Shown piece by piece: positions 26,430 to 58,600 of a DNA stretch of 64,000 bases. A program made the position numbers and the translations under genes. Position 1 is the stretch's first letter; the number at the start of each line of letters is the position of its first letter. Source of the DNA: Aplysia californica (Eukaryota). The notes below the pieces were generated by a model that ran no database searches, was not told the origin of the DNA, and was given only the letters and a program-made list of their open reading frames with translations. The DNA lies in contig NW_004797350.1 in assembly GCF_000002075.1 (NCBI RefSeq), positions 1,483,107 through 1,547,106 on the forward strand, given 5' to 3'.

Positions 26430-27255
26430 CATGAATGTAGAAACATTAAAGGGGCCGGTAAAGAAAGTAAGCTCTGCTGTCACACACAATCACAGACAAC
26501 TTGGGAGCAAACGCGTCTGTTCGCATGGGGCAGGTAACGCCTTTTTGTTTGGGCTTGCAACAACCTTTGACCTATGAACTCTGAAGTGTTTTTTAGCGAT
26601 TTCTTATAAACACTTTTTTTTTTCTCTGTTTTGCCCTTTCAAGTTTTCCTTTTGATTTTTAAGAAATTCAAACTAAAGGAAAATGATATTTTGATTTTTA
26701 CTTCATTTTACTTCTAAAAACACAACTAATTCGTTATAATAAATTATGCTAAATAGTCACATGATATGTAAATGATGTTTTCACATACGGGCATTTCAAA
26801 CCTACATTTTGTGCTTTCAATATGGCGGCTCCCATATTGAAATGGAAGCGGGTAACAAATACTTCAGGACCATGTCCAAGACCGCGCCATGGACATCGTG
26901 CAGTGGCCATAAAGGATCTAATGATTGTATTTGGTGGTGGAAATGAAGGAATAGTGGATGAATTGCACGTATACAACACTTGTAAGTAACTGTTTGTTTC
27001 ATGTGTACTGCTCCATTATCAAAAATGGCGGCGTTTGTGTTGTTTCGATTGCGATTTCAGCTTTCGAGAAATAAGAACGATTGAAACGTCTTATAAAAAC
27101 AGTCAAATTAATTTCCTGCATTGTGATATCATTTTGAACATTTGTGTGTGTTTTTTCTAGTCCATAATTTGTTTTAGATCTGAATGTTTTCGAAAAAGCG
27201 GCAGTTGCCAATGAACTGCGTCGGGAGCTTGGGAAGATTCAAAATGGCGGCGCCC
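26430..27255. promoter_or_regulatory. Putative bidirectional TMEM187/HCFC1 promoter region with YY1 motifs
   Basis: Divergent genes; locally CpG-richer sequence; AAAATGGCGGC at 27022 and 27241, and CAATATGGCGGC over the HCFC1 ATG. Confidence 0.6.
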
Positions 27256-29187: not shown

Positions 29188-29272
<85 letters not shown>

Positions 29273-35200: not shown

Positions 35201-38200
35201 TTTTGTAGCAGAAGAGGAATGGGATAGCGCTCTGGAGCAAATGAAAAGGAAATTAAATGTTCATCTTAAATCGCTTTTTGCCGCTTTCAAAACCACACCT
35301 TGATACACATTAGACGGATTAACTTCACACTTCTTCGTGGCTCTCCCCTACCCCCCTCCCACTATTCACTGTCCGATTTCCCCGCCGCCCAGGCCTGCCC
35401 ATTCGCACCCTGACCACTGTGGTCTCCCCCCTGCCCATGACCCTCGGCCAGTCTCCACAGACCATCAAAGGTAGCAGTATATGCCTTTCTACGTCGCTCT
35501 TGCATTCTGCGTGCACGCCTGCGACTAGAAATGTTACTCACTCTCGCATGGCTTTCGCAGCTCAACAGGTCTTTTTTTTTAATGTTGTGTTGGAACTTAT
35601 TTTTGTGTTCCCATTTTTATTGGCTTTATTCTTGGTTGGGCTCCCCCTTGAAATATCTTGTAAGTTTGGCTTATTTTAAACCTATTTATTGGGATGGTGT
35701 GTGGTGATATTGATCCTTCCCCCCACCACCCCTATTGATGCTCATAACTTGTAAGTGATGATGAATTCAGTTCTTCACTTACTGCACGAAGGTCTTAATG
35801 TATTTTCCTGATTATTTTTTTTATTATGTAGGTATCTGGTTTAATTCGCATTATGGACTTTATTTTTAAAAGGTTTCCATGGAGCATCGTTTTAAAAATT
35901 CCTCTTATTTCTTTCCTCCTGCCCCACCCTTTTTTTATTGAAGCATGAATACTGATACATTGGCCGGCTTTCGATAAAATGTTGATAAATAGTAAGCAAC
36001 ATTTCCTCTTACCCACAGAAGCAGCAGGCTCTTAATTTCTGTTACTGTCTAAAACAGCTGAGGAACATGGCAAAGTTATACCTCAATAGGAGCCTATGAA
36101 ATCACCATAAAGCCAATGCTCCAACAGTATGTAGGAGAATCTCAATGTATGGCTATGATGTAGTAGTTAGTATGTCATGGTCTTGCAGATGTTTCAACAC
36201 AATAAATTCACTCACAGAATTAGAAAACCATATCACAAAGATGAGTTTTGATAGGAACTATGAATTTACTCTTTGTCATGAAGGAGGATTAACACTTTGC
36301 CGTCACATTTTGGGGAAAATCCAAAGAAACTGGGTGGTAAATATCGCCAATCTGCGAGATGAGGCCGCAAAAAAATTAAGCATAATAATTTTCGTATTCA
36401 AGAAAAAAAAAATTAAGCCCTTGCTTAGCAGATGTGTGCCTGTTTTAATTATGCCCAGTCATGCAATGATCTATCAGGCTTTTGCTGTTAAGGCTGCTTC
36501 TTTTTTTTTTTAAAGCTCAGTAAACCTTTTTTTAATTTAATTTTTGTTTACTTTTGTTGGTTGAGATTGTCATCTTATCATCCTAACCCAACATTTGGAG
36601 GTTCTTTTTGAGCAGGGTTTGTATTTTTTGTGGCTAACTTTTACCCCTGTTATTGTTTGCCTTCCTCTTTGGTCTGGTTTTGTCCTATTCTATTTACTTT
36701 TACAGTATTTTGGTAGTCATCACACACTGATAGAGTGTATGGAACAGAGCCAAAGCTATCATGTATTTATTCTTTATTTGGAGCAAACAAAATTGTTTGT
36801 TCTCCTGCAGTTCCTTTTTAATCATTTCTAAAGAAAGCAACACTTGTGCTTCTAACTCGTGTAACATGAATATGATAAACTAATAACAGCTGTGGCTGTG
36901 CCGTGTGGCAGACCTAGATTATGGAGACAGTTTTTAAAAATGACTTATATAATGCATGTTTAAAAATCAGTGGAGTTGGTCCATATTTCAGATTCAAAAT
37001 GACCCCTGGACTCATTATTTGTGTCATGGTTTAAGAAGAGTACGACCAACACAAACAGAATAAGTGTTGTGGGTGTATCCATACATCTGCTGGTATATTT
37101 TAGGTCTTTATTCGATAAATGAAGCTTGGTTGGGGTTTGCGAAGAGTGTAAGGTTGATTTCTTTCTCAAAGATGTGTTATTTCAGCAAAGCCATCTTAAT
37201 CATTCTGACTTTGTTGAAAAAGCAGAGTAGGGAAGGAGAGTCTTGAGTAATCTTCTGTCGGTAAATATAAATAGAAAATTCAAAAAAAATTATTTTTTGT
37301 CTGTCAACACTGCTCAATGTTTCGCCTCATAAACTCTCCTAGTTAGTTTTTTTAGTTTTAGTAAAGAGTTTTACAGCACTTGCAATGCAATAAGGTCATA
37401 TAAGTGCTGAAGATTAGAGGTGTTACAAGAGAGTAACAACAAACGTAGAAAAGAAGGAGGAGAGATAAGGAGGATAGATGTTTAAGAGGAAAGAAGGAGC
37501 AAACCACACCAGAGCACCCGCCAACCACCCACATAAACTCTCCTCAAGGAGCAACTGGGAGTAAACCTGAAGGCAGCACTGTATATATATCATAGTCATT
37601 CCGTCTTTGGTGATATCTGAGGAGAATTGTTTTTGCAATATTTCGGGTCTTGATTTTTGTGTGTGCCAGGAGGTTCTTGTAGTTTGGCACAAAGGACAAA
37701 GATTCATTTTAAAACTGAGACACACAACTTTGGTGCATACGAAATGCTTTCATAGCGGTAGTCTCATAAGCCCTGAAGTTTATTTAGGGATGTATATCAG
37801 AGATCAATCGACAAAGGCATCTACATGTTTGTATCCCTCTGTGTGCTCCACAATGCCTCTTTTACTTTGTTGTTTTATTTGCTTTTAGATTGAGTACTCA
37901 AAAAAAGGGGTGTTGTTATTTTTTCTTGAAAAGACATTGAGCCGCAGCCCTGCTGAATGTATAACCACTGTAATAACTTACCTGTTGTACTAACAGTTTC
38001 AATTTTGGCATGTTGATGGTTTGGTCATTAGTACACTTGATCATATATATATGGTAGCCTTCATTCAAATCATGAGGGAGTTGGTTCTGAAAATCTTTGT
38101 CTGGAGCGATAATATCAAATGTGCGAGAAATGCTGATTTGTTTTTACGTTTTCCGTCTAAATGTTTTTGTTTTACATCTATTTGTCTTGTATGAGCTGAT

Positions 38201-41200
38201 ATGATTAATGTGTGTGTCTTGTCTGCTAGATAGAGATCTTGCTTTGTACCTTAGAAGCTAGTTCTTTTTACTTGTTTCAAAGTAATGGTTATACATAATG
38301 GTCTCTCTGGTCAGTGTGATAACGACCAAGGTGTAAGATTTATTTCCAAATCAAAACTTTGATTCTATGTTCATTCAGTCTGCGTTTTCTTTCTTTCTTT
38401 CTTCCTTTTTTCTTCAGTTAAAAGACATTGAATCCACAATAAAATTGTTGGTTTTTCCTTTACCTTTTCATCCTCTCTCATCTATCTCTTAAAACAAACT
38501 TTTTGTGGATTTAGCGTCTTAAATAAATTAGCTATACGTGCTAAAAATCAAAGGTCCGAGTTGTTTCTCTCTAGGTTAATTTTTCTTATGTGTCCTGTAA
38601 GGACTATATTTGTTTGAAAGTTAAAAAGTTTTTTGACGTGCGCAGAGTGTATGTGTGCCAGTACATTTTCCTGATTGTCGGGTCTCTTCTTTTTTTTCTT
38701 TCTAATATTGTTGGAATGTTTTGATTTCCTTACAGCAGTGAGCTAATTCGCTGACATTCCACTCTAGCTCGGTTCTCCTTCCTCAATTATCTTGGTTGTT
38801 TGTCTAACCAAGAGATGTTTTGTTTCTTAGTGACGACAGCACCTCGCATCCGCGCTCCGATGACCATCACTCCCGTGTCCAACACCATCCGCGTTGCCAC
38901 CCCACAGCTCCCCACCATCAGCCAGGGTGTTCAGAGGGCTGGAGCAGTTGTTGCCACAGTGAGTCCACCTTGTTTTGTGGTCCTTGTGTTGTGCCCTTGG
39001 ATGGGAATTCTTTGGGGGGGGGGGGAGGGTTCTGGTTGATCAGAGGAGTGTTCTTATGCCATGTTCGCTGTGGAGGCACAGAAATTATTCTCAAATACTG
39101 AGGAAGCGGCATTTATAGGATAATAGGAGCAGCTTCAGATTCTGAGATGTGTTTCTAAAGATAAAAGAGAAGGAATAGTTAATTTGTTTGTTCAGTTATG
39201 TTTTTATAAGTATTGTCATGGGTATAGGTTGGTTTAGTTTTGAAGGGATGGGTGGGTTCATACAGTTTTCAAGCGAAGACTTTAACTCTTTCTGGACGTG
39301 CTGTGAGTCCACACCCCTTGCGGACGTATCGCTGATATATCGGCTGTGATAGGGTGCCTCAGTATTGTTTCGTTTTAACAAGGTCCGTCATTTATAATTA
39401 CTTTTTGTTGCTATTTAAAAACTCGGAAAAGATTTAGGAAACAAAAACATCTAGTTTCACTTTGCCAAAGCGTGGGTTTAGGGAAAAATGAATGGATTAG
39501 TTCTTGCGGTCTTGCATCAACAAAACGGTGTAAGCGGACTCAGTATAACTTTCATAAATCAAACAAAAATTAGAATATATTGCTTTCAAATAAAAGGCTG
39601 CGCATTCAGAAATTTATGGATTATGCTCTTGGCCTGTATATGAAAAGATAGCTATGCTGATTTGCTTTCACATGTTTGGTAAATGTAATTTTTTGTGTCA
39701 AATTTTATTTTTCTCATCACCATCGCCATTTCTAACCCTTCTAATTCATACTTATGTTTAAAATTAATCCTTACTTTATAGTGGGATGTATTCCTCATTC
39801 AATGTCCTTTAATTTGATATGTTATATGTTACATTTGGGTTATGGTTATGCTTCTATGAAGTTATTTTGTACGCCACCTGCATAGCCAAATCGAGCAATC
39901 GGTTAATTATGTCTAGACCCCCAAAAAACTGTGTTGAAAGCGTTAACAAAGATCACTTTCCACAGACTTCTGGCAGTATGTCTGGCATAGCCGCCCTGGC
40001 TGCTGCAGCGGCTGCAACTCAGAAGATCCCCGGTACTCCAGCCAGCGCCACGACAACACCAGCATCTGGCATCAAAGTTGTCACACCGACAATTGTTACA
40101 CCAGGTGGCATGAAGGTGACTCCTGTTGCTGGGAAACTGCCAGGTAAGGCCTCTCATTATAGATCATTTCTTCTTGTAGTATGTCTGAGCAAAGAGAGAG
40201 CTAAAAAGTAATTCTACCAAGGGTTTGTGGACCTTGTGATTTTATTGTGGATGCAAAGGTCCCATATCGCATAATGTAGCAATGCCAATCGCCCGCTGCG
40301 CTTTGGGCCGGAAATCGGCCTCCGGGCGAGGGGTATTTTTTTGGGCCCCTCGGAATCAGAAGTGACTCTCTTCTAAGTATAGTTACGGGGAAACTCCTGG
40401 ACGAAAATAAATGAAACTCGGCAACCAACCAGAGGAAAGGTTAAACTAACGACATGCCAGCGTACAATCCCGAACGATTACTAGAACCGGAGATATTGCC
40501 GTGTTTGTGCGAATTTCCTCTGCGGTTCGAAAACTAAGCGGAGCTGTGGGTTGATCGCCGACCACACAAGCGCCCCACATGTCTTCTTTATTGCTGTAAA
40601 ATTTCAGATCTCTGGGTTTAGTAGATTTTCCGTACCAACTTAAAATTACCACCCATCCATTGATAAAACACTAGATCTAGAAACTTGATCGCGCTTTCCA
40701 AACGCGAGGTGCCGGCATGCAAGAGGCGCGTGATCGCTAGGCGGCATGTGATTGGCTGCCTATAACCAAATGGGTCACCGATGACTACATCGCGGGTTTT
40801 CCCGATAGCGCTTTACTGAGTTTTAGAAGGGGTGATCGCGTCGTGGTAAAAACGATGTCACGCAATTCAACAAATTTTACGCAAATATCAGTCTTTAAGA
40901 TCCAAAGTAATGAAGACATCGAAAAAGTGATAGCAGAACTAGATTCGGCACTAAAAAATCACATGGAGATGCCAAGTTTCATTCATATGCTCCAATTCAT
41001 TACTGACTTATGAACAGTTTTTCCTCAAAATACATCAAAACATGTCCCACATTTTGGCGATTTTTTCCTATATGAAGGTCCTCCAACATTTTGCAAACAA
41101 AAATCCCAATAACTTTTTTATTTATCAATGGATTTTTAAAATTTAAAAACCATAGTTCTTAGAATTTACTCTATTTTCATTTAAGCCCATTTTTAAGCAT

Positions 41201-44200
41201 TTTGGATGAAAATTTAATTTTTCATTGTCATTGCTACATAATGTAGACCTGCATGTTTGCCGACAATCGTCTGAAATCCGACAATCGCGACCCCGACCCG
41301 CGAACCGGCCGATGCCATCGCTAGGCCCACCTGTGTTAGTCAATGTTCGAAGTACGAGGCCTGGCCGTGTGCCAGCGACCCCTTTTTCTCCCGTCGGCTT
41401 TGTCGGCACTTTCGTTTTCGTGTCGACCGCCGACGCGCGCACCGCCGACTGCCGACGTCGGCGTTTCCGACATAATTGTCGGAACCTGAGTAGAAATACG
41501 AATACGAAAAAGTACGACGACTTAAATTATCTACTTTCAGTTTCTTGCTCGAGCGGCCATTTTGAATTTCGTTTGTTTACTGATTGTTCAGATCATGTGG
41601 ATTCTTTCAAGTCCGACTCACTTGTTCTACTCTAGATCTAGATCGAGATTTAGATCTATATAGATCATTATGGATCTCAATGGAGGATTCATATTCCAAT
41701 TCTATTGTGTCAAACCATATTATAGGTTGTGCTGTAATATTAATGTTGGTAAAACGCATTTTATCAGGTGCGTGAATTATTTACTTAGAATTAGAACAAA
41801 GATATCTAGAGATCTAGAAATCTAGATCTAGACTAAATCTAGATCTAGACCCCTAGACTCAACTGAATCCCTCTCTTCGGAATCGGATGCGGATTTCTCG
41901 TTCAAGGTCTAGATTCTAGATCTATTCCTATTCACTTGTTCTACTAGATCTAGATCTATATGGAGGATTCATAGATCTTTATCCAATTCTATTGAATTGT
42001 ATCAAACTCTAGCAATGTAGGCCATATTATTTTTATTATTATAAATGCTCCTTGTTTGTTTTGGAGTGTGCTTATTTCTTTCTTTTTTTGTTGTTGACTT
42101 GTGCTGGCCTTTTTACATGAGGGCCGTTGCAGGTTCTTTTTTGGGTTAGGCCTAGGAGTAGGCAGATAGGGTTTGGGTTAGGGTTAGGTCTCTTCTTTAT
42201 TGTGTTTGTTCGGGTGGTTGCTCGTTACTCGGAAATCCTTCCTTTTATGACACCCACAATTTAAAAGCTCTAAAGTTAATATGGGGGGGGGGGGGGTTGC
42301 GCAAAATTTTCAGACAATCTGGTTGAGGCTCACATGCAGGTCTAATAATGAAAGATGAGTAAAGCTAGTATTATCTAATTAAACCTTGTGAAGAGCAAAA
42401 GCTCAGCTGCTTCTAAACCAGTGACAACACCAACACTGAACAATGATCAGTATCATGGAAGTTTATGGATTTTTTTGTATTTTAGTGTTAAGGAGACCAA
42501 TATATATAGTTTCTTTAGTTTAGTAGAGTTTTTCGGCACTTACAACACAATAAGGTCATATAAGTGCCAAAGATTAGAAGTGTTACTAGAGCGTAACAAA
42601 CACAAAAAAGGAGGAGAGATAAGGACGATGGATGTCTGATAGGAAAGAAGCAGACCACACCAGAACACCCGCCAACCACCCGCATATAGTGACCTTGCTG
42701 TCTTCTGTCACCAGGTAGCACCTTGGCCCCTGGCACACAGACCGTGAGAGTGGCCCCAACAGGCGCCACCATCCTCAAGACGCCTGGCTCGGCCACAAAC
42801 ATCGCTGGCAAGCAGATCATCACCGTCCACAAAGCTGGAAACACCGGCTCCAGCCAGTCGCAGATAGTGACGCTGGTGAAGACCACACAGGGCATGGCTA
42901 TGGCCAGTGTGAGTGTTGTGCTCTTGTCTTTGCTTTCTGTGTTATGGGGTTTTCTTATTTTTTGTTTCTGTTATTGATTGGGGGGGGGGGGGGCATCGAG
43001 AACAGATGTTGTGTGTTGGGGGGGGGGGGGGGGTTAGAATAGAGTGAAATGTGAAAAATTGTTCTATACTTGACATGTCTTGCTTTATTCAAATTCAAAA
43101 GTTTTCGGGGTGCTTTTTGGTTTGTTTGTTTTTTTATTCTGATCTTTTTCATCATGTGTGATATATTCTGTCTTTCAAGTTAAGACAAGAATATGTATGG
43201 GAAATGTTTATGCAGTCTTTCCCTTTGTAAGAAAAGAAAACTTGAAATTATAAAAGGCGTTTCACTGAGAAAGAGAGAGATATTCTAGCTTTATCCGTTG
43301 TGCCAACAGCCCAAGAACCCCCTGCCACAAGGGGCTACCATCGTCAAGCTGGTCACCACACAGGCGGGAGGGATCAGCAAGCCGGCCACAGTTCTGTCCA
43401 CTCAGTCCAGCTCGGGACAGACACCCACCATCCTGGGCATCAGCAGTGTCCAGCCAAATGTAAGGCTTTGTCGTCTCTTGACTTGTGCAAACATTGTTGC
43501 AGTGATATTTATGTATTTATTTATTTGTTTGGTGTGTATCATCGTTGTAGGATCTTGGGGGTGGGGGGGTCTTTTTGTTTTTAAACAATAAATGTACACA
43601 AAGAGATGGCTATCATCTTTGCGATAAGTGGGTTTTTGCCGGGGATAACATTATTTCTGTTTGTTTGTCTATGAGATTTACGCTGGACAAGAAATTACAA
43701 GTATACTGTTACATGTGCCACTGGTGCTAGGAATATAAAGAAATAAACATTTTGAACTTTAGGTTTGAGCATGCTGTTAATAGTTTGTTGTTTCTTCCAG
43801 TCGAGTCCCGGACAGAAGACGCTGACCACCATGATCAGAACTATCCCAACCTCCATGCTGTCCATGGCAAAGAGCGGTAATCAGGCCATCAATGCCGCAG
43901 GAGTGACCACCACACAAGTCGGCACCAAGACTATTGTTATCGCAGGTGAGAGTTTTTTCTTGGTTGTCACAGAGAAATCAAGGACATAAGCTTTACATTC
44001 GGGTCTTCTTGACCAGTTTCTTGTTTAGTCTACTCTATTTACATCTTGTTCTGTCTGTTTTGCCGTCTTCCTTGTCTGTTTTCCAGTGAAACATGGTTAA
44101 GTTTTGCCAGCCTACTATAAACCGCAAAGGAACTCTTATTATAATATTTATAGCATCTGCGCTTGTTGACCCTTCTCTTTAGTTTAGGTTGTAGCTGATA

Positions 44201-47200
44201 AATCTTTGCATCTTTAGGTTAGTGGCATTCAAACTCAGCATTTAAGATAATGGCGCTCTTTTGTTTTTAGCTCAACAATGTTTGTTGATCTCTTTGTTTC
44301 AGCCCCCAAGGGCAGCACGGGCAGCCTGAATCAGCCCACCAAGATCATCACAAGTGTGCCCAAGCTGGCGGGCCAGTCTGGTAATACACAGTTCATCGTG
44401 GTCAGCCCCCAGAGTGTGGCGGGAGCTGTGGCAGCAGGTCAGTGCTAGGAAATTAACAACCTCGTCTTGCTCTTTTTATTTTGTACCTCAGCCTTTTCTT
44501 ACTGTTTGTGAACTATATTTCTCTCTGGTGTTTTTGTTTTTCTTACTTTTTTCATACCTTAAATGACTGTTATTGTGTGGATGTGCCTCTCTTTAAACAA
44601 ACAACTAACGTGTGAAAGTGTTGGATGAAGAATACAACTTGTACTGTATAGCCGTGTCTGAAGCGTGTTGTTTCCGGCTCTAACTCCCGTTTCTTCGTTG
44701 TCCTCCTCACAGGCAACAAGCCAGCTCAGGTGTCGGCCATCTCATCCGGAGGGAACATCATCTCTCAGGCTGGCAAACCCGTCATCACAGTCATTTCTGG
44801 AGGTAAGGATGGGAGTGTTGACTCCTAGGTTTTGGTAGTTGGGAGGTGTTCTGAAGAGTTCTTGCCTCTTTCGTTGTGGTACATTTTTATGGATGTGTGA
44901 TCCTTATTGTGAAGCCTGGCTGAACTCTCTTAACTCTACAATGACAATTAAGCTTTGTTGATATATCTCAGGGTGACATTTTACCTAAAATATCTATAGT
45001 TTGGATATATTCTGGAATTGTATTAGTGCCCAGTCCCAGGTGTACATTAGGGGAAGACTAAGAATGATAAAACAAAAGAATTTAGACATTCATGGTTCTA
45101 TTAAGGGGGGGGGGGGGGCGCTACACCCCCAAAATCAAAACTCAGCTCAAAATCATGGAATTTGAGTTGTAGGCATTTTTAGCTTCCTCAGCTTCTCCTA
45201 CAACTATTTCATGGCATAAGAACCCCCAAAAACCATATTTTTTCCCATACTGGGCCTGTTTGTAACCGCCATTTCCTCATAAAGTCAGTATTTTATTTTT
45301 CTTTATCGGCCGTTTTCTCAAAATGCGACTTTTCTCTATACTTTTTTGAATAACTCCACCATTTTGCACAGAATGAAGAGAAGAGGTAATACTAAAAATT
45401 TGTCTGTTGAATTTTTGATATATGGAATAGATTTTTGTTTATGGTGTCTGGAGTGTGGATTTTCACGGATTTTTCGCGAACTTGAATGCTACTTCTAAGT
45501 CGATTAGGGAAAAAACAACAGACAAATTTTTAGATCTAATGTTTGTGAACACGCATGCAAAAAAGCAATCAATTTCCATGAGCGATAAGTGCGGTATTCA
45601 TTACGTAAGACATGTCAATAAAATCAAATATGGCGGCGTATCAGTGGAAACGAAACTTTTTTCTCAAATTTGATTGCGGATTTTAAGACTCCTTACTATG
45701 CTTGTTATGTGTGTGAAATTTGGTAAAATTCGGTCCAGTAATAAGCGAGATGGCCTCCAGGTGTAGCCCCCCCCCCCCCCTTAAAGTTTTGTTATCGATT
45801 CTTTAGCCCCTCCCTCCCCAATTTCTCTTTGCACATTAATTGTATAAGCTCTCACAGTTTAAAATCTTCTCCTTGATTTCTCTCCCTAGGCTCCACATCT
45901 GGTACGCCCTCAGTGACTCCAGCCACTGGTCACACCCTGGGCACTTCCCCGGCCATGCGTGTGGTCAACAGCAACGCTTCCACCATCTCCCTCATTACCC
46001 AGGCCACCAGTGAGGCCGGATCAGGGGCCGCCACAGCCACCATTGGTGGCCGCCAGATAGTGACAGTCCCTGCAGGCCAGGCCGGTTTGACGGGTGCCAA
46101 GGGTCCCGTCCAGATCACCATCACTCCCGCCAACCGTGGCAACATCTCCACGGTCACACTTCCCTCGTGCATACGTCAAGTAGCTAAACCGGTCGTGGTG
46201 GGGAACCCATCGGCCAACGGCACTCAAGTTGTCAGTCTCGGCGGAATGGGCACGGCTCAAGTTGTGGCGGTGAACCCGGCCCCTGCTGCCATGGCAGACC
46301 AGGCTCAGGTGGCAGAGGCTGTTGGTGAGGCTGGAGAGGGTGACGGCCAGCAGGTACTGCAGCAGTTTGATGGAGCCGCCGATGACGATTGTCTGGAGAC
46401 GGTAATTGTTGACGAGGAGTTTACCGAAGACGAGAGCCAGTATATCACATCGCCAGATTTTTGTCTGGATGGTTGTGTCGAAGAAGATGACACAGAGTTC
46501 CGGGTTGAGGACACATACATGTTCCCAGACACGGGGGATCATGGGTATGCATATACGCATGAGGACAGGTACGACAGTGATGAAGACTTTCAGATGCCTC
46601 AGTTTGACGGTGCTGGCGAGGAAGGAGGTGAGGACGATAAGGAAGGAGAGGAGGGTGTGAAACAGGAAGGAGAAGAAGGAGGCGCGGACCAGCCGCAGGA
46701 AGCAGAGCAAGAACAGGCGGAAGGCGTGGTTGGTGAGGCAGGCGAAGAGGCCATGGAGGGTGAGGGCGCTGCGTCAGGGGAGGTCCAGCCTCCGGCTGAG
46801 GATGCTATGGAGGAAGGTGATGGTGGTGTGGCGGGAGGTCTCGATGGTCTGGTAAACCCCGCAGTCGCAGCCGACTCCACTAATGGCGCGGAGAGTCAGC
46901 AGCTGACCGAGGCGGAGTTACAGCAGCAGGCAGAGAGTGCTCTAGAGGCGTTGGCCGAGGCGGGCGGTGTGCTGGGTGACCAGGCCGTCATGGACAACCT
47001 AGAGGGGGTCCTGGCCCAGCAGGCACAAGCGGCCCTGGATGCGGCCAATCAGGCGGCCACAGCCCAGGCGCTGGGTGAGTTGGCGGCGCAACACGCTGCT
47101 GAAACCCCCGAGGAGTTGGGAGATGTCAAGCCAGAAATAAATGAAGAGGCGGCACCGACAGCTGACCACTCGACGGGTACAGATACGCCCATGGACACTG

Positions 47201-47438
47201 ACGCAGCAGACCTGGTCCCTAAGGAAGAACCTCCGGACGAGGCTCTGGCATCCCTTGCTCAGAGTCTCGCCAACGCTGCCAATGGTGGTGCAGACGGATC
47301 TGGTGAGATTTCTGTTCCGTTTTTGCTTTGTTTTTTTTTATCTTTAGAGTTGGCCTTGTGCTACAGTGGTTTCTTTAAATTGATGTTGGTTGTTTCAACA
47401 TGAAGGATCTAGTAATTGTGTGCTCTCTGGAGGATCTC

Positions 47439-47469
<31 letters not shown>

Positions 47470-50400
47470 TTCTTCTGGCGCTGTTGCTTCATGAACGGTC
47501 AGTGATGCCGACAGCACGCAGGAACTCAACACTAGCTCGGGGTCCTTAAAAAGTGTAAATGGTAAGTGAAATCTGTTACTGACCCAGAGAGCATGTTTTA
47601 CAGTCATGTCTTAGTGGTCAGGTGGTTTGGTTTTTGTTTCAAGTGCTGTTGTAATGTGAATATAATGTTCCTAGTACATGTATGTTTTGGGGGGGGGGGG
47701 TTCAAAAATTTGTTTTTAATTACCATTTTGCTGGACCCTTTTTTTGAATGACGTGGCTAGGCCCGTCTACCCTATTGTGTTGTATTATCGCTGGTCCATG
47801 AAATCCTTAGTCCTCAAAAGTCTGAAAAGCTTTTGGATACCAAAGATTTAAAATATCCACATGGTTTTTTAATTACATTGTGCACGTTTTTAATTTTTCT
47901 CAGATCCCTTAGCGACACTGGCATCAGCTGCCATGTCATCAGCCCCAGTGACGACGTTAAAAACCTCAGACGCCAGCGTGGGTGTGAACAACGACGTGGG
48001 GCAGGAGGAGGCTCGTCACGAGGTCAAGCAGGAGAAAATTGTTGTGAAGCGGGATGCCCAGCAGTGGTTCGACGTGGGCTTTATCAAGAGCACCTCTTGC
48101 ACTGTCTCCCACTACCACCTCCCCTCAGAGAACGGCCAGGGCAACACTGATGTGAGTGTAAGGATTTGGGTTTTTTCTCCTTCCTTGCTTTGATATGTTT
48201 ACTTACTCATTTTTTTTTTTGTTGTGCGTTTACATGATTGAAAATCTTTATTTGTTTTGAAAATGAGGGCAGATGAATGTTATAGTCTCTCCAGTATGGT
48301 TTTTCTGAGACTTTAAAAAGAAGAGATACTGTGCTTTCACATGCAATGGTTCTTCGAATATTTTGCCAATAGATGTTTTTACATTAACTTTTCTTTTGGG
48401 GAGGGGGGATTGTCCCTTTTTACCATGGCAGTATAAATCTTGGGTCGTCTTTTTGGATGGCCATTTAGTACAGAGGTATTCATCGATTTAACCCTATCCG
48501 TACACCTGAGGTCATTTCGTACCCCAGGGATTGCTCTTTGTTTTTTTTTCATTTAAGAATACTTCTAGTGTAAAAATTTATTTGAAACTTTCAGTATTGC
48601 TGAACTATTCATTTTTGACAGATTGCTGTGTAAAGAAAATCACACCAATGGTCTCATTCTAAAACGACCATTTTGGCACCCGATGGGGTCATTTGTGCCC
48701 CCACTCTCCAAAGAGGAAAAAAACCTCAGTTATTCTGGTATTATCCGTATCAAGCGGGGTAACAAACGACCCCAATGTATCCCCTGCATCGAGTATTATA
48801 GTAATGGCTTCGTAAAAATTTCCCAGCATCTGGATTGCTGCTGGGTATCGTTCACGCTCTTGTGGTTGAGCTGGAGATATCCGAAGGCCTACAAAAATAA
48901 TTATACAGTATAACACGGATAGGTCGAACACAGAAGACCCGAAACCACGCTTCCGTCGAACTGTGCCTGTGGTCCCGATTTTTCTTTTTCTTTATCTTTA
49001 TAAGGAAATCACGTAAAGCTCAAACACAAACACGGAATAGTCGAACTAATTACGCCGCCGTAGAGGTCGAAAGTTGATGTCCTTTGGGGTGCACTTGAGA
49101 CAGAATAACAATAATAATCACAATTTTTTAAAATATGGGAAAAAACAGGTTCGGTGAAATACCACCTCACACATATACACACACACTCACCCCTCCACAG
49201 AAGCAGCTAGCTATGCTATTTTTAGCATGCTACTCGACACACATGTGCATACCTGGGCCCTTTGTCTAGCTAGGCTGGTGAGGAAGGATTGTGCATCACT
49301 GTCTATTGTCTTGCCCCAAAGGTAGCAATCTTTGTTGCTTCCCCTGGTTCTTGATGCAGCCGATGCTATAACACTGTTCACGGATCCCTCGAACTACCGA
49401 GGCCGGTCCTGACAAATTCGAGGAGCAGTGTGTGTTATACTGTACTACGCTTTGTATTGAGACTGGTTGTTTTTTTTCTTTGCCAAGTTGCCCTGAGACT
49501 GGTAAGTAAATGAATCTCTCTAAGTTTGTTTTTATTTGCCTGTTTTAGTTCTCGCGGTTGCTTTTTCTTTTTGCCTTTGCTATCGTCTGCCTTTTCTCCT
49601 TCTACTCTTTGTTTATCAATCTTGTGTCACTCTTCCTGTCATTACAATGTCGTATTTTGGCGTACAAAGTCAAATGAATGTAGATCGAACCACACAATAG
49701 AAAATTGATGTTGTGATTGAAACTGATATTATGTAACGAAATATATAAGTTATCCCCGTAATGAATTTGCTAGGCCCAGATCTAAGCTACACTTCAGTAG
49801 GCCTATGCAGTTTTCTCGCCCCCTTTATACAGAATGCAGATCACTTGCCACCCTCTAATAATTGTAATCGATTCTAACTGCACACTGGCGAAAAAGCACT
49901 GAATACTTGTAAATCTAAACATCAAGCCTGGTTGTACTGGTGGAAAGGCAGTCGTATGTCGCTTATCTGAGAATCTGTTCGTATGATTATGTATTGCCTG
50001 CATTCGAACCAAGCTGGTGTCAAATTTGAAGAGAGAGGACTGAGGGGAGAAGGAATAGTGACAGAGAGAAGACTAAATCGTTTCTTTTTCTATTTTCCCC
50101 TCAATGTTTAGATGGAACGACATAATGTCTTCAACCAGTATCCAGTTGTATGGGGTGGTGATGATGATGATGGGTATGGACAGGAGAGTGATGTGGCTAG
50201 TGAGTCGGAGGATGATATTCTGGGAAACGAAGCAGAAAAGAGTGATGTGGAGGAAGTGAGTGGAGAAGAAGAGGTGGAAACTGAAAGCGATAATGGTGAC
50301 GATCAGCTGGAAGTGGTGTTTCAACCTGTTGAAATGGGAATGCTTGATATGCCACATGCAGCTGGGGAACCTGCATTGTCAGACAGTGAAACGGGAGTAC

Positions 50401-53400
50401 CTCTGCACTATGCAGGCAAGGATGGGATGCTGTGGTCCAGGGTTGCTCCTACACAAACACCATCTTTCAACATATTCAAGCCTCCAACTGGGCAAGTGAT
50501 GAATCCAAGATATTTGCTGACAGTAGGCGCCACTTACAAACGTTTCATCACTGCCAAGATGATAGAAAGAATCGTCTTATGCACCAATAAGGAAGGAGAA
50601 AAGGTTGAGGGTAATAAGTGGAAAAAGACAGACAGTACAGAGGTTGAGGGGTTCATTGGTTGCCTTTACCATTTGGGGGCCAGGCGCGATGCCCGCACCC
50701 CAACCACTGTCTTGTGGAACAGGACCGATGGCAGCAACTTGGTACAGGCTTGTTTCAGCAGGGCTAGGTTTTTAAAACTATCCCACCACCTGAGATTTGA
50801 TGACAAGGACACTCGCAGAACTAGGCGGGTAGTAGATTGTTTTGCCCCCTTGCGAGAGCTATGGGATGACTTCAATGACAACTTGTGTAGAGAGTATACT
50901 CCGGGCCCTACCCTCACAGTGGATGAACAGTTGATTCCATGGAGGGGCCGCTGCTCATTTCTCCAATATCTTCCGTCTAAACCAGACACATTCGGGATAA
51001 AGATCTTTTGGATCTGTGACGCAGAGAATGGGTTTCCTCTTCATGGTGAACCGTATCTTGGCAGAAAGGGGACGAAAAGACAACAAAATCTAGAAAGGGA
51101 TACAGTAATAGCGTTGACCCAGCCCTACTTCGGAAGTGGGCGCAATTTGACTGTGAACAATTTCTTTACAGACCTGACCTTGAGCACTTACCTCCTCTCA
51201 AACAACATCACCTTGGTGGGAACAGTTAAAAAAACCAGGCGCTTCCTGCCACCAGAATTTAAGAGTGGAAAGGGATTGGGCAAAGGAGATGCCATCTTTG
51301 CCTTTCAGAAAAAGGCCACTATTTTAGCTTTCAAGTCAAACAAGAAGGAACATGTTGTGCTGCTCAGTACCATGCACTGTGCTGACAAATTTGACGAAGA
51401 GGTCAACAAGCCTGAAATTGTTACATCCTACAATTCCACGAAAGGAGGTGTAGGCACAATGGACCAAATGTGCCACGCCCTCACCACCAAGAGAAAAACC
51501 AACCGATGGCCAATGCTCCTCTTCTACAATATGCTAGACCTCGCCTCTGTAGCATCTTTGAATATCTGGAGAAAGATCGCCCCAGAGGACAAACTGTCCA
51601 AAGAGGACAACAGAATTCTGTTTAATTTAGCTTTGGCAAAGGAGCTGACAGGACCTCTTCTACAAATACGACACACTGTCCCAAATCTTCGCAGAGATCT
51701 GAAGCACACCATTGCTATTGCCATCAAGGATTGTGGACTCCAGCTTCCAGAGCAGCCAGTGGACGAAGAGGTCGGCTCAAGCCGAAAGCGTGGACGATGC
51801 CATGTTTGTCCTCGGAAAGATGACTCCAAGACAACCCAACACTGCTCTCTTTGCCATAGACACACTTGCTCGAAGCATATATGGAAAATCTGCTCATCGT
51901 GCCTCGCTAATGAAGGTAAGAAAAGGTGGCGGTAGCCTACATCATTGTTGATTGGTCTGATCTTCCTGGGTTGTTTTTTTCTACAGTAGAACATGACTAT
52001 AGCGGGACCTTACTGGAATCCCCTTTATTTTTCTATGCAAACTCAATTGCCTGTGCTCGGGTTTAGTGGGGCAAGGAAAGGTCCGAACTCAGATACAGCG
52101 GGAGAGATCGAGTGAGTTCTAGCAGGGGGGAAGAGGGTTGGGGGGTGAGGGGGCTTTAGGCAGGCTCCAAACAGGCAGTCAACGGTGCAGTGTTGTGATT
52201 GGCCAGTCCAGTTATAAGTGAGGTGGGGCAGGCGACAGAGAGAGATGGTGCGGAGAGACACGTTACGTGAGCCAATCCAAAAGTGATGTGCCGTGGCTTA
52301 GACGCTCAGGATGAGAGCATATAGGCCTAGGCTAGGCCAAAAAGTAAAAGAAGAGGAGAGCATGTAGTGTGTGATTCCTAATTCATTGAATTGCGATCAT
52401 TGATGCTCATAGGTATACGCACGCATCCACTTCACCAGTTCTACAGTAGGTACGATAGACAGCACTAGCAACAAGACCGAGGAAAAGATGGCTTCCAACA
52501 CAGGCAAAAGGAAATGCTTCTCACCTCAATTAACGGCCGAGATAATCAACGACGTTGACAAGAAAAGGAAGACTAATCTAAAGCGTAAATTTTATTTATT
52601 GAAGGGAGGTAATCATGTGGATTTAAAAAAATTGGGGGAATAATTTCCCCTTTGCATGCCTACAGCAGGAACTCGCCTTCAGCGGGATTTTTCTTGTAGA
52701 ACCAAAAGTCCCACTATAGCCGTGTTCTACTGTACTGTAGTTTTCCTTCAGCTTTCACACTCTTGTTACAGTTGTTGCACTCTGGTGTGATTTCCTCTTT
52801 ACCCTACTTTCCTGAATGCCTTTTGCTAGATATCATCTTCTTTGTCTACTTTCTTCATTTGAAAAGAGCTTATCCCCATAAAAATAATCTCTTCAACTGA
52901 AGTACGATACACCTGGTGCAAGTGCTACATGCAACAGATCTACCGTACAAAAAGCATGTAAACGAGCCTATGGTATGTACGCTGTTTTTTTTAATGTAGC
53001 ACATGCACAAGGGGTAGCCTACTCTAGGTGCAGATGGTCAGGTTTCCTACTTTGCTCAGTATTGCGCTGTAATTGTTCCATGCTCCTTCTTTTCTTTGTT
53101 ACTATTTATCACCCTCAAGGGGATTTTGTGGATGGTTTGCGGTAGCTCTGGTGTAGTCTGCTCTTTCTATGTCTTTCTACGTCTTGCTGTTGTCAGAATC
53201 TACTTCCTGGAGCTGAATGGCCTAACAGTAACTTATAGTGTTGGAAAAGCCTTCCTCATTAAAGTTAAAACATATACCTGTACAACATACACAGCATTAT
53301 ACCAAATACTCTATTCATAACTTGACAAACACAAAAAGATGTGATCTAGAAGAGCGTCTGTGTTATGGTGGAATCAAGTGTTTGTCAATTTTTGAGCATA

Positions 53401-55555
53401 TGGGGTTACTGGTATTGTTTTAAAGCCTGTTCATTTGCCTTTCTTTTGGTGAAAAAAATATTAATCTTTGTTGAATAGAAGTCGAAATATTTGCAATTAA
53501 AGGAGGTCAGGGTCGCCTGGTCTCAGAGATGAAATTAGCAAGAAAATGGCCATCAAAGTTTGCAATTTCCATAGCTTGAGAGTCTTTGGAAACTGAAAAT
53601 TGACATTTTTTGTGCCTTTAATCAATGTTTTTCAGTAACATCTACACAGAAAATGTGATTTTAAATGGATATAAAAGGTGTTAAGCCAAAGAAAGAAAAT
53701 TTTGTAAAAATTATTCAACGGTCAGAAAAATGCCAATTTCTTTGATTTCATTATTTTGATGAGCGCCTGATTTCACTACGATGCCTCACATTTAATTATT
53801 TTTTCAGGGCTCTGCGTCTGGGGTCCTTCCCTTCCCCCACAGGGTCTGATGTCCCAAGAGACTAGCCATCTCGACGAAGGTCACGAAATGGTTCTGGGGA
53901 ACAAATGAAAATGTTCAACTGCATATTTTTTCTTGTTGGTTAATAAATCATGTTCACTAAGAAGTACAGTATCTCAGTTTCTCACTTTTTGTATGGCTAT
54001 TATTCACTAGACTGGAAAATGACATGTTGTTCCCCCACCAGGGCAGTGCTACCGACTGAAATGTCTTCAGGCCATTCCCAACGGGGGGGATACCCCCCGA
54101 GGCGGTGCCACTGACTGTCTTTAGGCTATCCCAAAGGGGGGACATTTCTTGTTCATGCATAGTAGAATTGTAAATGGGCTGATTCATCAATGTCACGCTC
54201 ATAACTGTGCCTGATCTACAATTGGGAACTGCTGCTTTTTCTTTCCTAATCCTTACTATTGTCATTTTTGCTCTACTTCTTTTGTATGTTTGTCACACTC
54301 TTGTGACCCACTATTTCCAGGGTGCTTTAATAGTCGAAGCAGACTTTGTGCTGTTGAAGCTAGAGAGGTGAGCAGAGAAAGTCTGATTCCCTGTAAGGAC
54401 TTCTCTCTTGACATCCACCCCTTGGCGTTCATATGCCCTTATGCAGTTGCGAGCGCCGTAAAATCTCTTCTAAAACTAAAAGGAGGAATATGTTTTTATG
54501 CACAGTAGAATTGTAGATGGGCTGATTTATCAATGTCGTGCTCATACTACTGTGCCGCAACAACATAGGGGGGACCGCTGTTGATATCCACCACTTGGCG
54601 CTCATGCGACCTTTTGCAGTTGCGAGTGCCGTAAAAAAAACTTTCTAAAACATAAAACAGTTAAATTGTTTCTGTTTAAGGGCACGTGGGTGGCGGGCGC
54701 TCTGGTGTGGTGTTCTTCTTTGTGTTTGCTACTATTGCTTTCATCTGTTTCCTAGTGTTGAAATTACATTACAGTGCCGATCGTCCCTTAAAACCCCAAT
54801 AAACTCTTAACACGCTGTTTCGGGTTGCCAGAGTCTGGCCACATACTGTTACTGTAGGTGATACAAGTGAGTCACAGCTACAGGTTGCGACTTCAGTGCT
54901 TTCTTGTCATATTTCCTTTTTTTAAACAGTGAAAACAGTTCATAACAAAGAGTGATCTTAAGAAGAAATCACATTTTCACTTTTGAAAAAAATTGGAGAT
55001 ATGACAAGAAAGCACTGAGGTCACGAGGTGGTAACCTGGTTCGATCCCGTAGGTCCATAGTCATGAGCGAATGGTTCCTTTGTTGGCTTTCGAAGTCAAA
55101 ATGACTTACCAAGGGATTATCGTCATGCTGGTAGTCATAAGCCCCCAGCTGGCCGCTCCTCCTCTTCGTCATGGTGGACTGCAGCCCCCACAGTCTCTCT
55201 GACCTCAGTAGGCCAGACTCTCGGACTTGCAGCACCTCTCGCATCAACTGCCATCTGTTCCAACGGGCCTGTCGGGACAGATAGGCTGAAATGACAAAAC
55301 TAATAACAGTATAACACGGATAGCTCAAATTCTTCCTGACCGGCCTCGGTATTTCGAGGGATATCTTACAAAGATAGAAAAGGGAAAAAACGGGACTGCA
55401 AGCACAGTTCGACAGACGCATGATTTTGAGTCATTTGTGTTCGACCTATCCGTGTTATACTGTATGAGACTTTGGGTTTGGGTTGACACCACGTTTAAGT
55501 TAAACACACATAATAAATAATAAGTAGGTTAGTCTTTTCATAGGTGGAGCACTTG

Positions 55556-55604
<49 letters not shown>

Positions 55605-58600
55605 TCTCTCTCTCCCTCTCCCTCTCTTTCTGCCCCACCCCCAGTTAGTGCACAGGGCAGTGAAGAAAAACCCAGAAAAGTACAGTAAAGTCGATGGGTC
55701 TTGCCAATTTTATGTCACTATCGACATAGGCGTCATTATAAGAGAGGGCTAAACTTGAGTGGAAGGAGCAGAAAAAGGACGATAGCAAAGTGCAAAAAAA
55801 AAAAAAGAAAACAACACAATAGAACCCCCTTCCTTAGTCAAGAAGAGTCTCAAATAAACAACTGGGTCGGAACAACTAATGCAAGATGAATTCAAAACTA
55901 GATCTACGTTTACGATTCTCACAATGAGTGTAATCGATTACATACCCTGTGAGAAAGTTTTGTCCCGCCTCAAGTCTAGAACTGAGAGAGAGAGAGCGAA
56001 GTTCTAGAACTGAGAGAGAGCGAAGTTCTAGAACTGAGAGAGCAAACTAATTTTGGGCCAAACTTTCTGTAACGAGTATAAAAGCTTGTGCGACATTAGT
56101 GCTAACCGGTTGAACCTTCGACACATCCACAAAACCAATAACAAAAACAAACTAACCTCTGTTCGCTTAAGGCTCTGTGCAACACACTTGCCGCCATCTT
56201 GGATTGTAAAGCCTTTCGATTCCAGCGTGAGTTTGATTACTTGGGGTCGTTAGTTACCCCGCAGGGTACGGATCGGAATAACAAGTAAATTTCCTCTTTC
56301 CTCTTTGGAAAATGGGGGTACTGAGTACCCCGCATCGAATGGATACGATAGTAAAACATAGTGTACGGATACGGTTAATTATTTCATTGCTTTCTTTGGT
56401 GGCTGCCATTTGTCCAGATCCTGAATTTCTTGAGAAAAGATTTTCTCAGAAGGGCATAGGTTTAAGTGGTCAGTCCTGGCTAGCAACAACGGAATGTTGA
56501 TAGAGTGTGAGACCTGTAAGCCTTGGCAGATGTGATCAAGTTGGCGGAGAAAGAAACAGAAGTAAACTTGTGAAGTATAGTGTGTGTCATTTCTTCTTTA
56601 ACTCATTAACCATAGCTTTCTTTCTCCATCTCAAGACCCGTCTGTGGTGTAGCGGTTAATAATTTTGCTATGGCATACAGGAGACCCAAGTTCAATTCTT
56701 GATTATGGAGAATTTCTATCAGTTGTCTGTCTTTCTTCTGGGATGCTGTATCCCTCTCAGTTAGGGTTGGCCTTGACAAGCACGGTCAAAGCCTGCCGAC
56801 TAAATGATCTAAATTGTGTTGATAGAGACGTAAAAACACCTACATTTGATTTTTTTTCCCTCTCTATGACAGGACATTGACGTGGTGAATGTGCCAGACC
56901 ACAGTGTCCTGAAAAGACAAGAGTTGCAGCCGGGCACTGCCTACAAGTTCCGTGTGGCTGGCATCAATGCGTGTGGCCGGGGGCCGTTCAGTGAGGTGTC
57001 TGCCTTCAAGACTTGTCTGCCTGGTTTCCCTGGAGCGCCTTCTGCCATCAAGATCAGCAAGGTGAGAAACTGTTTGATTCTGTCAGGTCTGAGTGTAGTG
57101 CGACTTTGCTGTCGAAATATCTAGTCTGAGGCATCTTCAATGTAGGTTTTCTCTTTTGCATCTGATTTTGTTGTTATGCAGAAAAACAAACAAGCAATTT
57201 TCGAAAGATTTATTCTTTTCACAACTTCTGCTATGCAGCTATTTTTAGTCGTTTAGAGGCCGTCGGGTGTAGTTGTATTGATTGCTTGGTTTTCAACGGG
57301 GTTTTTTTTTTACAACCAGGGTTAAGGTAGATGGTTGTAGGATGCCCTGATAAGCCCTACTTTTTTACCTTCCCTCTGTTGTTTCTGTCTGTTTTACTTT
57401 TCCCCAGCACTTAAGTACCATTATTGTGTCAACGAGCGTCTCTTTACTCCAACAAACCACAAAAAAAAGCCCCCAGCTTTAAGCATGACGTTTCCACATG
57501 TTTGTATCGTGTTGTTGTTTTTTGTCCCCACAGAGCAGCGACGGTGCGCACCTGTCCTGGGAGCCTCCCCAGAACACGGCGGGCAAGATCATAGAATACA
57601 GTGTCTACTTGGCCGTACGCAATCAAAACACGGAGACCAAGCCCGGCACACCTGCACAGCTTGCGTTTGTGCGCGTGTTTTGCGGGCCCCTTCCCTCCTG
57701 TGTGGTAGCCAACTCATCTCTCACCTCTGCTCACATTGACTACACCACCAAGCCAGCCATCATTTTCCGCATCGCAGCTCGCAACGAGAAGGGCTATGGA
57801 CCCGCCACACAAGTCAGGTGGCTGCAGGGTGAGTGTCTGAAGGCTTGACCAGGGCTTCCAGTCTTCCGCAATTTTGCGGATTTCCGCAAATTAGCAGAAT
57901 TCTGCAAATGGAAAAATTTCCGTAAAAATTTGTGCCCCCCCCCCAAAAATTATTTTCAAAAATGCGAAATACAAAATTTCCGTTATTACCAATAGTCAAC
58001 AAAGGCCAACCCATACCGGAAGTGCTCTTTTATTTGAAAGTATAGACAGTGTCTTTCACTTTCTAAAGCTCAAGAATCAGAGCACCAGCTCTGTAAACAA
58101 GAGGAAGAAATGACGATTATGGTTCTAGATCTATCGATCTTGGGCCTTCCAAGAAAAGAAAACTCTAAAGAGAGCTTGATTATTTTTTTTTACCAGACTT
58201 GTTTATTTGTAAGTATTGTTGTGGATTTAAGTTGATATAGATCTAGATCTAGATCTAGCTGTCCAGTTATTTAGATCTACATCTAGATCTAGACTAGATC
58301 TATATCTAGATCTAGATCAAGTCAAGCTGTTATACTGGATTCTGAATCTAGCTAATCTAGACCTACACCTTATGATGATTATTGTGCAAACCAACACAAG
58401 CAGAAAAAAGTTGAACATTAACTGTCAAGTTTTATAGATCTAGTTGTGGATGTACAGTATCTGTACAAGGGAGAAAGCATGGCTTTGGATTTGGAAATAT
58501 ATGGATTAACACAAGCAGAAAATTATGTAGGCTAGGTCTACGTTCTAGGTCTATGCAGTATGCAAGGTATGTTTTTTTTTCTCACTTATTTTCTTGTTAA

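What the first reader, a model, noticed from the sequence alone, without database searches (positions are those of the whole stretch)
47904..51935. Candidate HCF-1/piggyBac transposase fusion by exon trapping (CSB-PGBD3-like)
Seen in sequence: the piggyBac is in sense orientation in HCFC1 intron 18. Exon 18 ends in phase 0 (AAC ACT GAT|GTGAGT, 48151). The transposase ATG (50112) follows a branch-like motif, a long pyrimidine tract and TAG, also phase 0. Splicing 48151 to 50112 gives an uninterrupted protein of about 1980 aa: 1373 aa of HCF (Kelch, basic and acidic regions) plus the whole 607-aa transposase. AATAAA lies downstream at about 53942 and 54798. Established: piggyBacs carry a splice acceptor before the ORF, and PGBD3 in ERCC6 intron 5 yields the conserved CSB-PGBD3 fusion. 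HCF-1 is a chromatin co-regulator with no DNA-binding domain of its own. Inference: the fusion could target HCF-1 functions to genome-wide piggyBac/MITE ends, forming a new host-transposase transcription factor.
Basis: partly seen in the sequence, partly recalled or inferred. Interest (0 to 1): 0.92.

Follow-up and report, generated by a model that had tools for sequence, protein, structure and literature searches.

The report
Domesticated dead piggyBac inside sea-slug HCF-1
An old, catalytically dead jumping-gene enzyme sits inside an intron of a sea slug's HCF-1 chromatin-regulator gene, has been kept intact by selection and supplies HCF-1 with an alternative last exon, but the splice that would fuse the two proteins has not yet been seen.

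Summary
The anatomy is as described. Eighteen HCF-1 exons encode 1,373 aa and end in phase 0; a sense-oriented, TTAA-flanked piggyBac (48492-56374) in intron 18 holds an intact 607-aa transposase with AG directly before its ATG.

New here: two catalytic aspartates are lost (D349N, D448G) while the zinc finger is intact. The element is old, with several nested repeats, and its only close paralogue is broken. Yet the ORF shows dN/dS 0.18 (p=0.012), so domestication is likely (~85%). Five other gastropod-type HCF-1 loci have a short, empty intron 18.

RNA shows the ORF spliced (51915|53808) to a polyadenylated terminal exon. Two reads join HCF-1 exon 18 to that exon through a 14-nt stop-containing micro-exon. 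The fusion junction 48151|50112 was not seen in four runs, none well suited to show it; I put it at ~55%.

A fusion would lose most of Fn3c, so Taspase-type cleavage would probably free an acidic-domain/transposase subunit rather than tether Kelch. It resembles CSB-PGBD3, membership unproven. The scan noted a similar MED29-piggyBac case elsewhere in this genome (unchecked).

The parts
26822..48151 (+). HCF-1 coding exons 1-18 (Kelch, Fn3n, basic, acidic, start of Fn3c), 1,373 aa
   Evidence: Exon chain without stops, all GT-AG; Pfam Kelch_HCF
46363..46611 (+). Two Taspase1-type QFDG motifs in exon 17 (Asp at HCF residues 980 and 1059)
   Evidence: two Q[FLY]DG motifs in all 7 homologues P0277-P0283; cleavage itself inferred from Drosophila HCF (PMC3234250, PMC6582346)
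47904..48151 (+). HCF-1 exon 18; carries the first part of Fn3-1c; phase-0 donor
   Evidence: Matches residues 6-32 of PDB 4GO6 chain B; exon 19 continues at residue 37
48488..48891 (+). TTAA target site (48488-48491) and left end of the piggyBac with terminal and subterminal inverted repeats
   Evidence: Inverted repeats I5, I7, I17; 3,411 genome matches to the 18-mer with up to 1 mismatch, control 0; 15% from the consensus of sibling non-autonomous elements
48903..49444 (.). Nested high-copy repeat (MITE-like) inside the 5' region
   Evidence: absent from sibling elements at this position
49488..49501 (+). 14-nt micro-exon (AG..GTAAGT flanks); in phase 0 it reads Leu-Pro-stop; derived, not present in sibling elements
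   Evidence: 2 reads in run X21 join 48151, this exon and 53808 (table 5c)
50070..50111 (+). Candidate branch point, pyrimidine tract and AG directly before the ATG (phase 0)
   Evidence: shared with the broken paralogue on C292; use not observed
50112..51935 (+). piggyBac transposase ORF, 607 aa; D271 kept, D349N and D448G lost; cysteine-rich domain 563-597 intact; internal donor after 51915
   Evidence: branch dN/dS 0.18
51916..53807 (+). GT-AG intron at the 3' end of the ORF, holding nested repeats (51982-52734, 8% from its family consensus; and about 53351-53792)
   Evidence: Joint in X21 (4 reads), X22 (3 reads) and an X5 contig of depth 23
53808..53966 (+). Terminal exon of the element: adds 33 codons to the transposase, AATAAA at 53942, contig ends at 53966
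   Evidence: acceptor and AATAAA also present in the C292 paralogue
56188..56378 (+). Right end of the piggyBac (terminal repeat begins CCG, not CCC) and TTAA 56375-56378
56873..57828 (+). HCF-1 exons 19-20 (rest of Fn3-1c and Fn3-2), lost from any isoform ending in the element

Best explanation
A piggyBac inserted long ago into HCF-1 intron 18 in the lineage of this sea slug, lost two catalytic aspartates, and its ORF has since been kept by selection as a DNA-binding, non-cutting protein (well supported). The element gives HCF-1 pre-mRNA an alternative, polyadenylated last exon at 53808 (shown by few reads). The transposase is a cassette exon in that alternative 3' end: exon 18 spliced to 50112 and 51915 to 53808 gives a 2,007-aa fusion, or 1,980 aa if the last intron is kept (inferred; junction unseen), while inclusion of the 14-nt micro-exon gives a truncated HCF-1 instead (shown, 2 reads). 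Because the fusion lacks most of Fn3c, Taspase-type cleavage at residues 980/1059 would most likely release a C-subunit made of HCF-1's acidic region plus the dead transposase, acting at some of the ~1,700 related elements as a transcription regulator or transposon antagonist (inferred).
For: Single near-intact copy; closest paralogue 86% identical with 7 stops and frameshifts. Branch dN 0.029, dS 0.159, omega 0.18, p=0.012 against 1; paralogue omega 0.76, not different from 1. Nested repeat 8% diverged with 5 indels per 740 nt; neutral survival of the ORF over that span 1e-4 to 1e-6. Of 82 near-invariant positions only 3 changed on this branch, 2 of them catalytic Asp (chance 0.003), against 10 in the paralogue. 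No differences listed in the ORF in four runs. Exon 18 spliced to the element's terminal exon; ORF spliced to the same exon. Upstream of 50112 contig depth is at intron level (3-5) against 10-23 in the ORF, and the 5' region is disrupted by insertions, so no own first exon is apparent.
Against: No 48151|50112 joint in four runs, including two contig sets with ORF depth 10-23. The one exon-18 splice into the element that was seen carries a stop. The acceptor scores weakly on a crude matrix and an X5 contig reads unspliced across it. Omega on the two branches is not significantly different by likelihood test (p=0.11; Fisher on polarised changes p=0.03), and part of the low omega may date from the mobile phase. 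No orthologous copy in a second species could be examined.
Confidence: 0.5

Rival explanations
1. The transposase is domesticated but made as a free 607/634-aa protein, from a promoter inside the element or by re-initiation at its own ATG after the micro-exon stop. HCF-1 only hosts it.
For: Own ATG right after the AG; ORF transcribed and spliced to its terminal exon; no direct fusion junction seen; in X5 ORF depth (14-23) exceeds the exon-18 bin (3.9). PGBD3 also has a solitary transposase transcript (PMC2268245).
Against: No 49501|50112 joint seen either; no coverage peak for a first exon between 48492 and 50111; 3' bias explains the X5 gradient equally well; HCF-1 transcripts do reach the same terminal exon.
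Confidence: 0.33
2. A decaying transposon whose ORF survived by chance; low dN/dS is left over from its mobile past and the RNA is splicing noise.
For: Low read counts (3-4 junction reads per 15 million); element absent from five other gastropod-type loci; background omega of mobile relatives is also low, 0.15.
Against: At least five nested insertions absent from the paralogue, one 8% diverged, set a long immobile period; dN of 0.029 is far below 0.085; neutral survival at most 1e-4; changes concentrate on catalytic residues.
Confidence: 0.1
3. The selected product is the shortened HCF-1 (1,375 aa, lacking Fn3c and the nuclear signal) or dosage control of HCF-1 through the alternative last exon; the transposase protein is secondary.
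For: This isoform is the only exon-18 splice into the element actually seen; its stop lies 5 nt before the last junction, so it should escape decay; the micro-exon is a new feature of this copy.
Against: Only 2 reads in one run; it does not explain protein-level constraint on 600 codons that this isoform skips.
Confidence: 0.07

Closest known systems
CSB-PGBD3 (PGBD3 in ERCC6/CSB intron 5, primates; PMC2268245)
   Same: Sense piggyBac with TTAA duplication and split MITE ends in an intron of a chromatin regulator; in-frame acceptor before the ORF; poly(A) signal; second catalytic Asp changed to Asn while decayed copies keep Asp; host acidic region upstream of the fusion point; many non-autonomous ends in the genome.
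   Different: Fusion junction not shown here; third Asp also lost; ORF is spliced on to a further terminal exon; a stop-carrying micro-exon competes; host protein is probably cleaved; conservation across species untested; mollusc, not primate.
Host-transposase fusion genes (KRABINER, SETMAR, PGBD1/2; bioRxiv 10.1101/2020.05.07.082677, PMC5381638)
   Same: Transposase captured through the element's own splice acceptor, under purifying selection, alongside the parental host transcript.
   Different: That survey is of vertebrates and its text does not mention HCFC1; my paper searches found no HCF-piggyBac or Aplysia case.
Trichoplusia ni piggyBac transposase (PDB 6x67; PMC7351741)
   Same: Same fold (Foldseek E=2.7e-38, 34% identity), acidic disordered N-terminus, C-terminal cysteine-rich domain, TTAA target.
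   Different: Equivalents of D346 and D447 are Asn and Gly; right terminal repeat altered; element carries several nested insertions.

Membership tests
piggyBac superfamily element | TTAA target duplication and terminal inverted repeats | tested here: met
   TTAA at 48488 and 56375; repeats 17 of 18 complementary; same repeat flanks related transposases in L043, L045
piggyBac superfamily element | DDE_Tnp_1_7 transposase with C-terminal cysteine-rich domain | tested here: met
Active autonomous piggyBac | Intact DDD triad | tested here: not met
   D271 kept, N349 and G448; triad defined in PMC7351741
Active autonomous piggyBac | Young near-identical copies | tested here: not met
   Closest copy 86% identical and broken
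Domesticated piggyBac-derived gene (PGBD-type) | Single-copy intact ORF under purifying selection | tested here: met
   Omega 0.18, p=0.012; survival simulation; measured against a paralogue and distant relatives, not orthologues
Domesticated piggyBac-derived gene (PGBD-type) | Expressed as processed RNA | tested here: met
   51915|53808 joint in three runs of two studies
Domesticated piggyBac-derived gene (PGBD-type) | Fixed at the orthologous site in several species | tested here: inconclusive
   Absent from five distant gastropod-type loci; no close relative reachable
Host-transposase fusion (CSB-PGBD3 type) | Acceptor in frame with the upstream host exon | tested here: met
   Phase 0 on both sides
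Host-transposase fusion (CSB-PGBD3 type) | Spliced host-transposase mRNA junction | tested here: inconclusive
   Not seen in four runs; raw runs have no coverage at 50112 and contigs drop rare forms
Host-transposase fusion (CSB-PGBD3 type) | Host transcript ends at the element's poly(A) site | tested here: inconclusive
   2 reads in one run join exon 18 via the micro-exon to the terminal exon
Host-transposase fusion (CSB-PGBD3 type) | Fusion protein detected and bound to cognate element ends | not testable with these tools
   Needs proteomics and ChIP or gel shift

The most novel reading that the evidence does not exclude
A mollusc has built a new sequence-specific transcription factor from HCF-1: alternative splicing, switched by a newly evolved 14-nt stop micro-exon, yields an HCF-1/dead-piggyBac fusion whose Taspase-released C-subunit (acidic region plus transposase) binds some of ~1,700 related elements; with the similar MED29 case noted elsewhere, Aplysia would have captured piggyBacs into core transcription co-regulators repeatedly.
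Probability: 0.3. Interest if true: 0.85.

Novelty: new member of a known kind. Interest (0 to 1): 0.62.

Why it matters
Host-transposase fusions are documented mostly in vertebrates. A selected, dead piggyBac inside HCF-1, a conserved chromatin co-regulator that is itself tethered to DNA through partner proteins, would be an independent invertebrate parallel to CSB-PGBD3, down to the same Asp-to-Asn change, in a standard neurobiology model. It is cheap to test (one RT-PCR). Even without the fusion, it is a lineage-specific domesticated transposase that gives HCF-1 an alternative 3' end.

Tried and rejected
Young active transposon: rejected (dead triad, no near-identical copies, nested insertions). 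Assembly artefact: rejected for the element (20 runs from 5 studies hold the stretch; no N in 47904-56378). Ancient pan-gastropod fusion: rejected (empty intron 18 in L062, L063, L064, L087, L088; closest transposase relatives in Elysia-type genomes, 60-67% identical, do not lie in HCF-1). Micro-exon as the element's native first exon: not supported, siblings lack it. Database search for a fused protein: none among the best 150 phmmer hits or; uninformative, because no sequence of this species or a close relative was returned and only sees 334-1,062 aa. Whether the C292 paralogue is a transposed copy or a partial duplication could not be settled: homology runs 50044 to about 56247 and no terminal repeat was found, with N gaps upstream. 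First codon-model run failed numerically and was redone. The sigma-70 promoter scan is irrelevant for a eukaryote and showed nothing above chance. N stretches were left as they are.
Full report
Source. The genome has 927,310,431 bases in 4,332 contigs. From memory this matches the Aplysia californica assembly; the closest named homologues are from Elysia and other gastropods, and an earlier scan note on this genome also says Aplysia. The species name is therefore likely, not tool-confirmed.

Host gene. A stop-free chain of 18 GT-AG exons from ATG 26822 to 48151 encodes exactly 1,373 codons and ends in phase 0; exons 19 and 20 follow at 56873 and 57534. Exon 1 hits Kelch_HCF and exons 19-20 hit fn3. 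Exon 18 matches residues 6-32 and exon 19 residues 37-98 of the HCF-1 C-terminal chain in PDB 4GO6, so intron 18 splits the first C-terminal Fn3 half-repeat. In five other gastropod-type loci the same intron, at the same position, is 119-755 nt long and holds no piggyBac.

The element. Inverted repeats with TTAA on both sides bound 48492-56374. The same terminal repeat flanks related transposases (about 60% amino-acid identity) in Elysia-type loci L043 and L045, which ties the ends to this ORF. The 18-mer TTAA-plus-repeat occurs 3,411 times in the genome with at most one mismatch, control 0, i.e. roughly 1,700 elements if most have two ends. The ORF 50112-51935 is a 607-aa piggyBac transposase; its model has mean pLDDT 84 and matches T. 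ni piggyBac best. Of the triad D268/D346/D447 (PMC7351741) only the first is kept; the others are N349 and G448. The cysteine-rich domain is complete.

Age and selection. The only close copy, on contig C292, is 86% identical, carries 7 stops and several frameshifts, and keeps both aspartates. The window's copy has at least five insertions that C292 lacks. One, 51982-52734, belongs to a star-like family and is 8% from its consensus with 5 indel events in 740 nt. An ORF of this size drifting that long would stay open with probability 1e-4 to 1e-6. A codon model with four outgroups gives dN 0.029, dS 0.159, omega 0.18 on the window's branch (p=0.012 against neutrality) and omega 0.76 on C292 (not different from 1); the two branches differ only weakly (p=0.11 by likelihood, 0.03 by Fisher on polarised changes). 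At 82 positions conserved in at least 90% of 51 relatives, the window alone changed 3, two of them the catalytic aspartates (chance 0.003), while C292 alone changed 10. Contigs of two runs show 0 differences in 3,014 ORF bases against 9 in 2,341 non-coding bases (p=0.0006; p=0.065 if only third positions count), with the caveat that contigs collapse variants. Together this makes domestication likely (about 85%). It rests on a paralogue and distant relatives; no orthologue was reachable.

RNA. One laying of 48010-54000 on four runs was possible. (a) A GT-AG joint 51915|53808 appears in X21 (4 reads), X22 (3 reads) and an X5 contig of depth 23 that ends at 53966, 24 nt after AATAAA 53942. This replaces the last 6 residues by 33, giving 634 aa. 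In X10 a contig reads unspliced across 51915. (b) Two X21 reads join 48151 to the terminal exon with the letters of a 14-nt micro-exon (49488-49501) between. In phase 0 it reads Leu-Pro-stop, giving a 1,375-aa HCF-1 without Fn3c and nuclear signal. The micro-exon and its pyrimidine tract are missing from seven sibling elements, so they are derived. (c) Neither 48151|50112 nor 49501|50112 is listed. X21 and X22 have essentially no coverage on the 5' part of the ORF, as in 3'-end libraries. X5 and X10 are contig sets only guessed to be RNA; they cover the ORF at depth 10-23 against 3-5 in the intron, and such contigs drop rare forms. The graph also breaks near a GAT repeat at 50160-50171 that is much longer in C292. 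So the decisive junction is untested rather than excluded, though its absence counts somewhat against it being the dominant form.

How it most likely works. Shown: ORF constraint, loss of catalysis, a spliced and polyadenylated 3' end, and (thinly) HCF-1 splicing into that end. Inferred: the transposase exon is fed from upstream HCF-1 exons, since no first exon is visible inside the element and its 5' region is broken by insertions. Direct splicing gives a 2,007-aa (or 1,980-aa) fusion; the micro-exon route gives truncated HCF-1. Exon 17 has two QFDG motifs (Asp 980 and 1059), also present in all seven homologues; Drosophila HCF is cut by Taspase 1, and HCF-1 subunits stay together through the interdigitated Fn3n/Fn3c module (PMC3234250, PMC6582346). 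The fusion lacks most of Fn3c, so the likely product is a free C-subunit of acidic region plus dead transposase, an activator-like architecture, rather than Kelch tethered to transposon ends. That step is inference only.

Comparison. It works like CSB-PGBD3: in-frame acceptor, poly(A) signal, Asp-to-Asn at the second catalytic position with Asp kept in decayed copies, many non-autonomous ends (PMC2268245). Membership of the fusion class is not established, because the junction, the protein and cross-species conservation are missing. The acceptor is shared with C292, and an AG lies 7 nt before the ATG in L045, while three sibling non-autonomous elements lack it, so it is probably an element feature and is no evidence of capture by itself. 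Paper searches found no HCF-piggyBac or Aplysia report.

Limits. The joined spliced model was not searched; exons were searched separately by reference. N stretches were not filled. Homology searches returned nothing from this species or close relatives, so blanks say nothing about fusions there.

Verdict. Real and probably functional: a lineage-specific domesticated piggyBac forming an alternative 3' end of HCF-1. Fusion mRNA about 55% likely; full best model 0.5; interest 0.62.

Noticed in passing
L043:8923-13767, L045:7428-13773, L044:6296-9183 versus window 48488-56378: In L043 and L045 the end resembling the window's right end lies 5' of the transposase and the left-type end lies 3'; L044 has the window's arrangement. 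The interior appears inverted relative to the ends in some family members.
   Followed up: partly
window 28363-29097 and 30746-31480; 31581-32745: A 735-nt stretch with HCF-1 exon 2 is repeated at 100% identity just before the N gap at 31481, and a 353-nt unit is repeated in tandem after it; probably assembly artefacts.
   Followed up: partly
window 23234-24169 (-): TMEM187 ORF head-to-head with HCF-1 (Pfam E=2.6e-66).
   Followed up: no
window 47503-47561: Exon-like 59-nt stretch with a strong donor between exons 17 and 18; it does not fit the reading frame of the chain.
   Followed up: partly
window 50160-50171; L041 (C292): A 4-unit GAT repeat in the transposase N-terminus is greatly expanded in the paralogue; RNA contigs break next to it, suggesting length polymorphism.
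   Followed up: no
L004:1110-3087, L014:1166-3113: Shorter (about 2 kb) TTAA-flanked piggyBacs of a related family with about 41% and 33% identity to this transposase and broken ORFs.
   Followed up: no
G000:C5:2036110, C102:253458, C187:651328, C88:724058, C162:162137: Several distant piggyBac-like ORFs with open frames of about 600-670 aa and no stops in the match; possible active or domesticated elements.
   Followed up: no
P0001 cluster: 1,036-aa proteins made of a tandemly duplicated piggyBac transposase in short ENA contigs; possibly an assembly artefact of circularised contigs.
   Followed up: no
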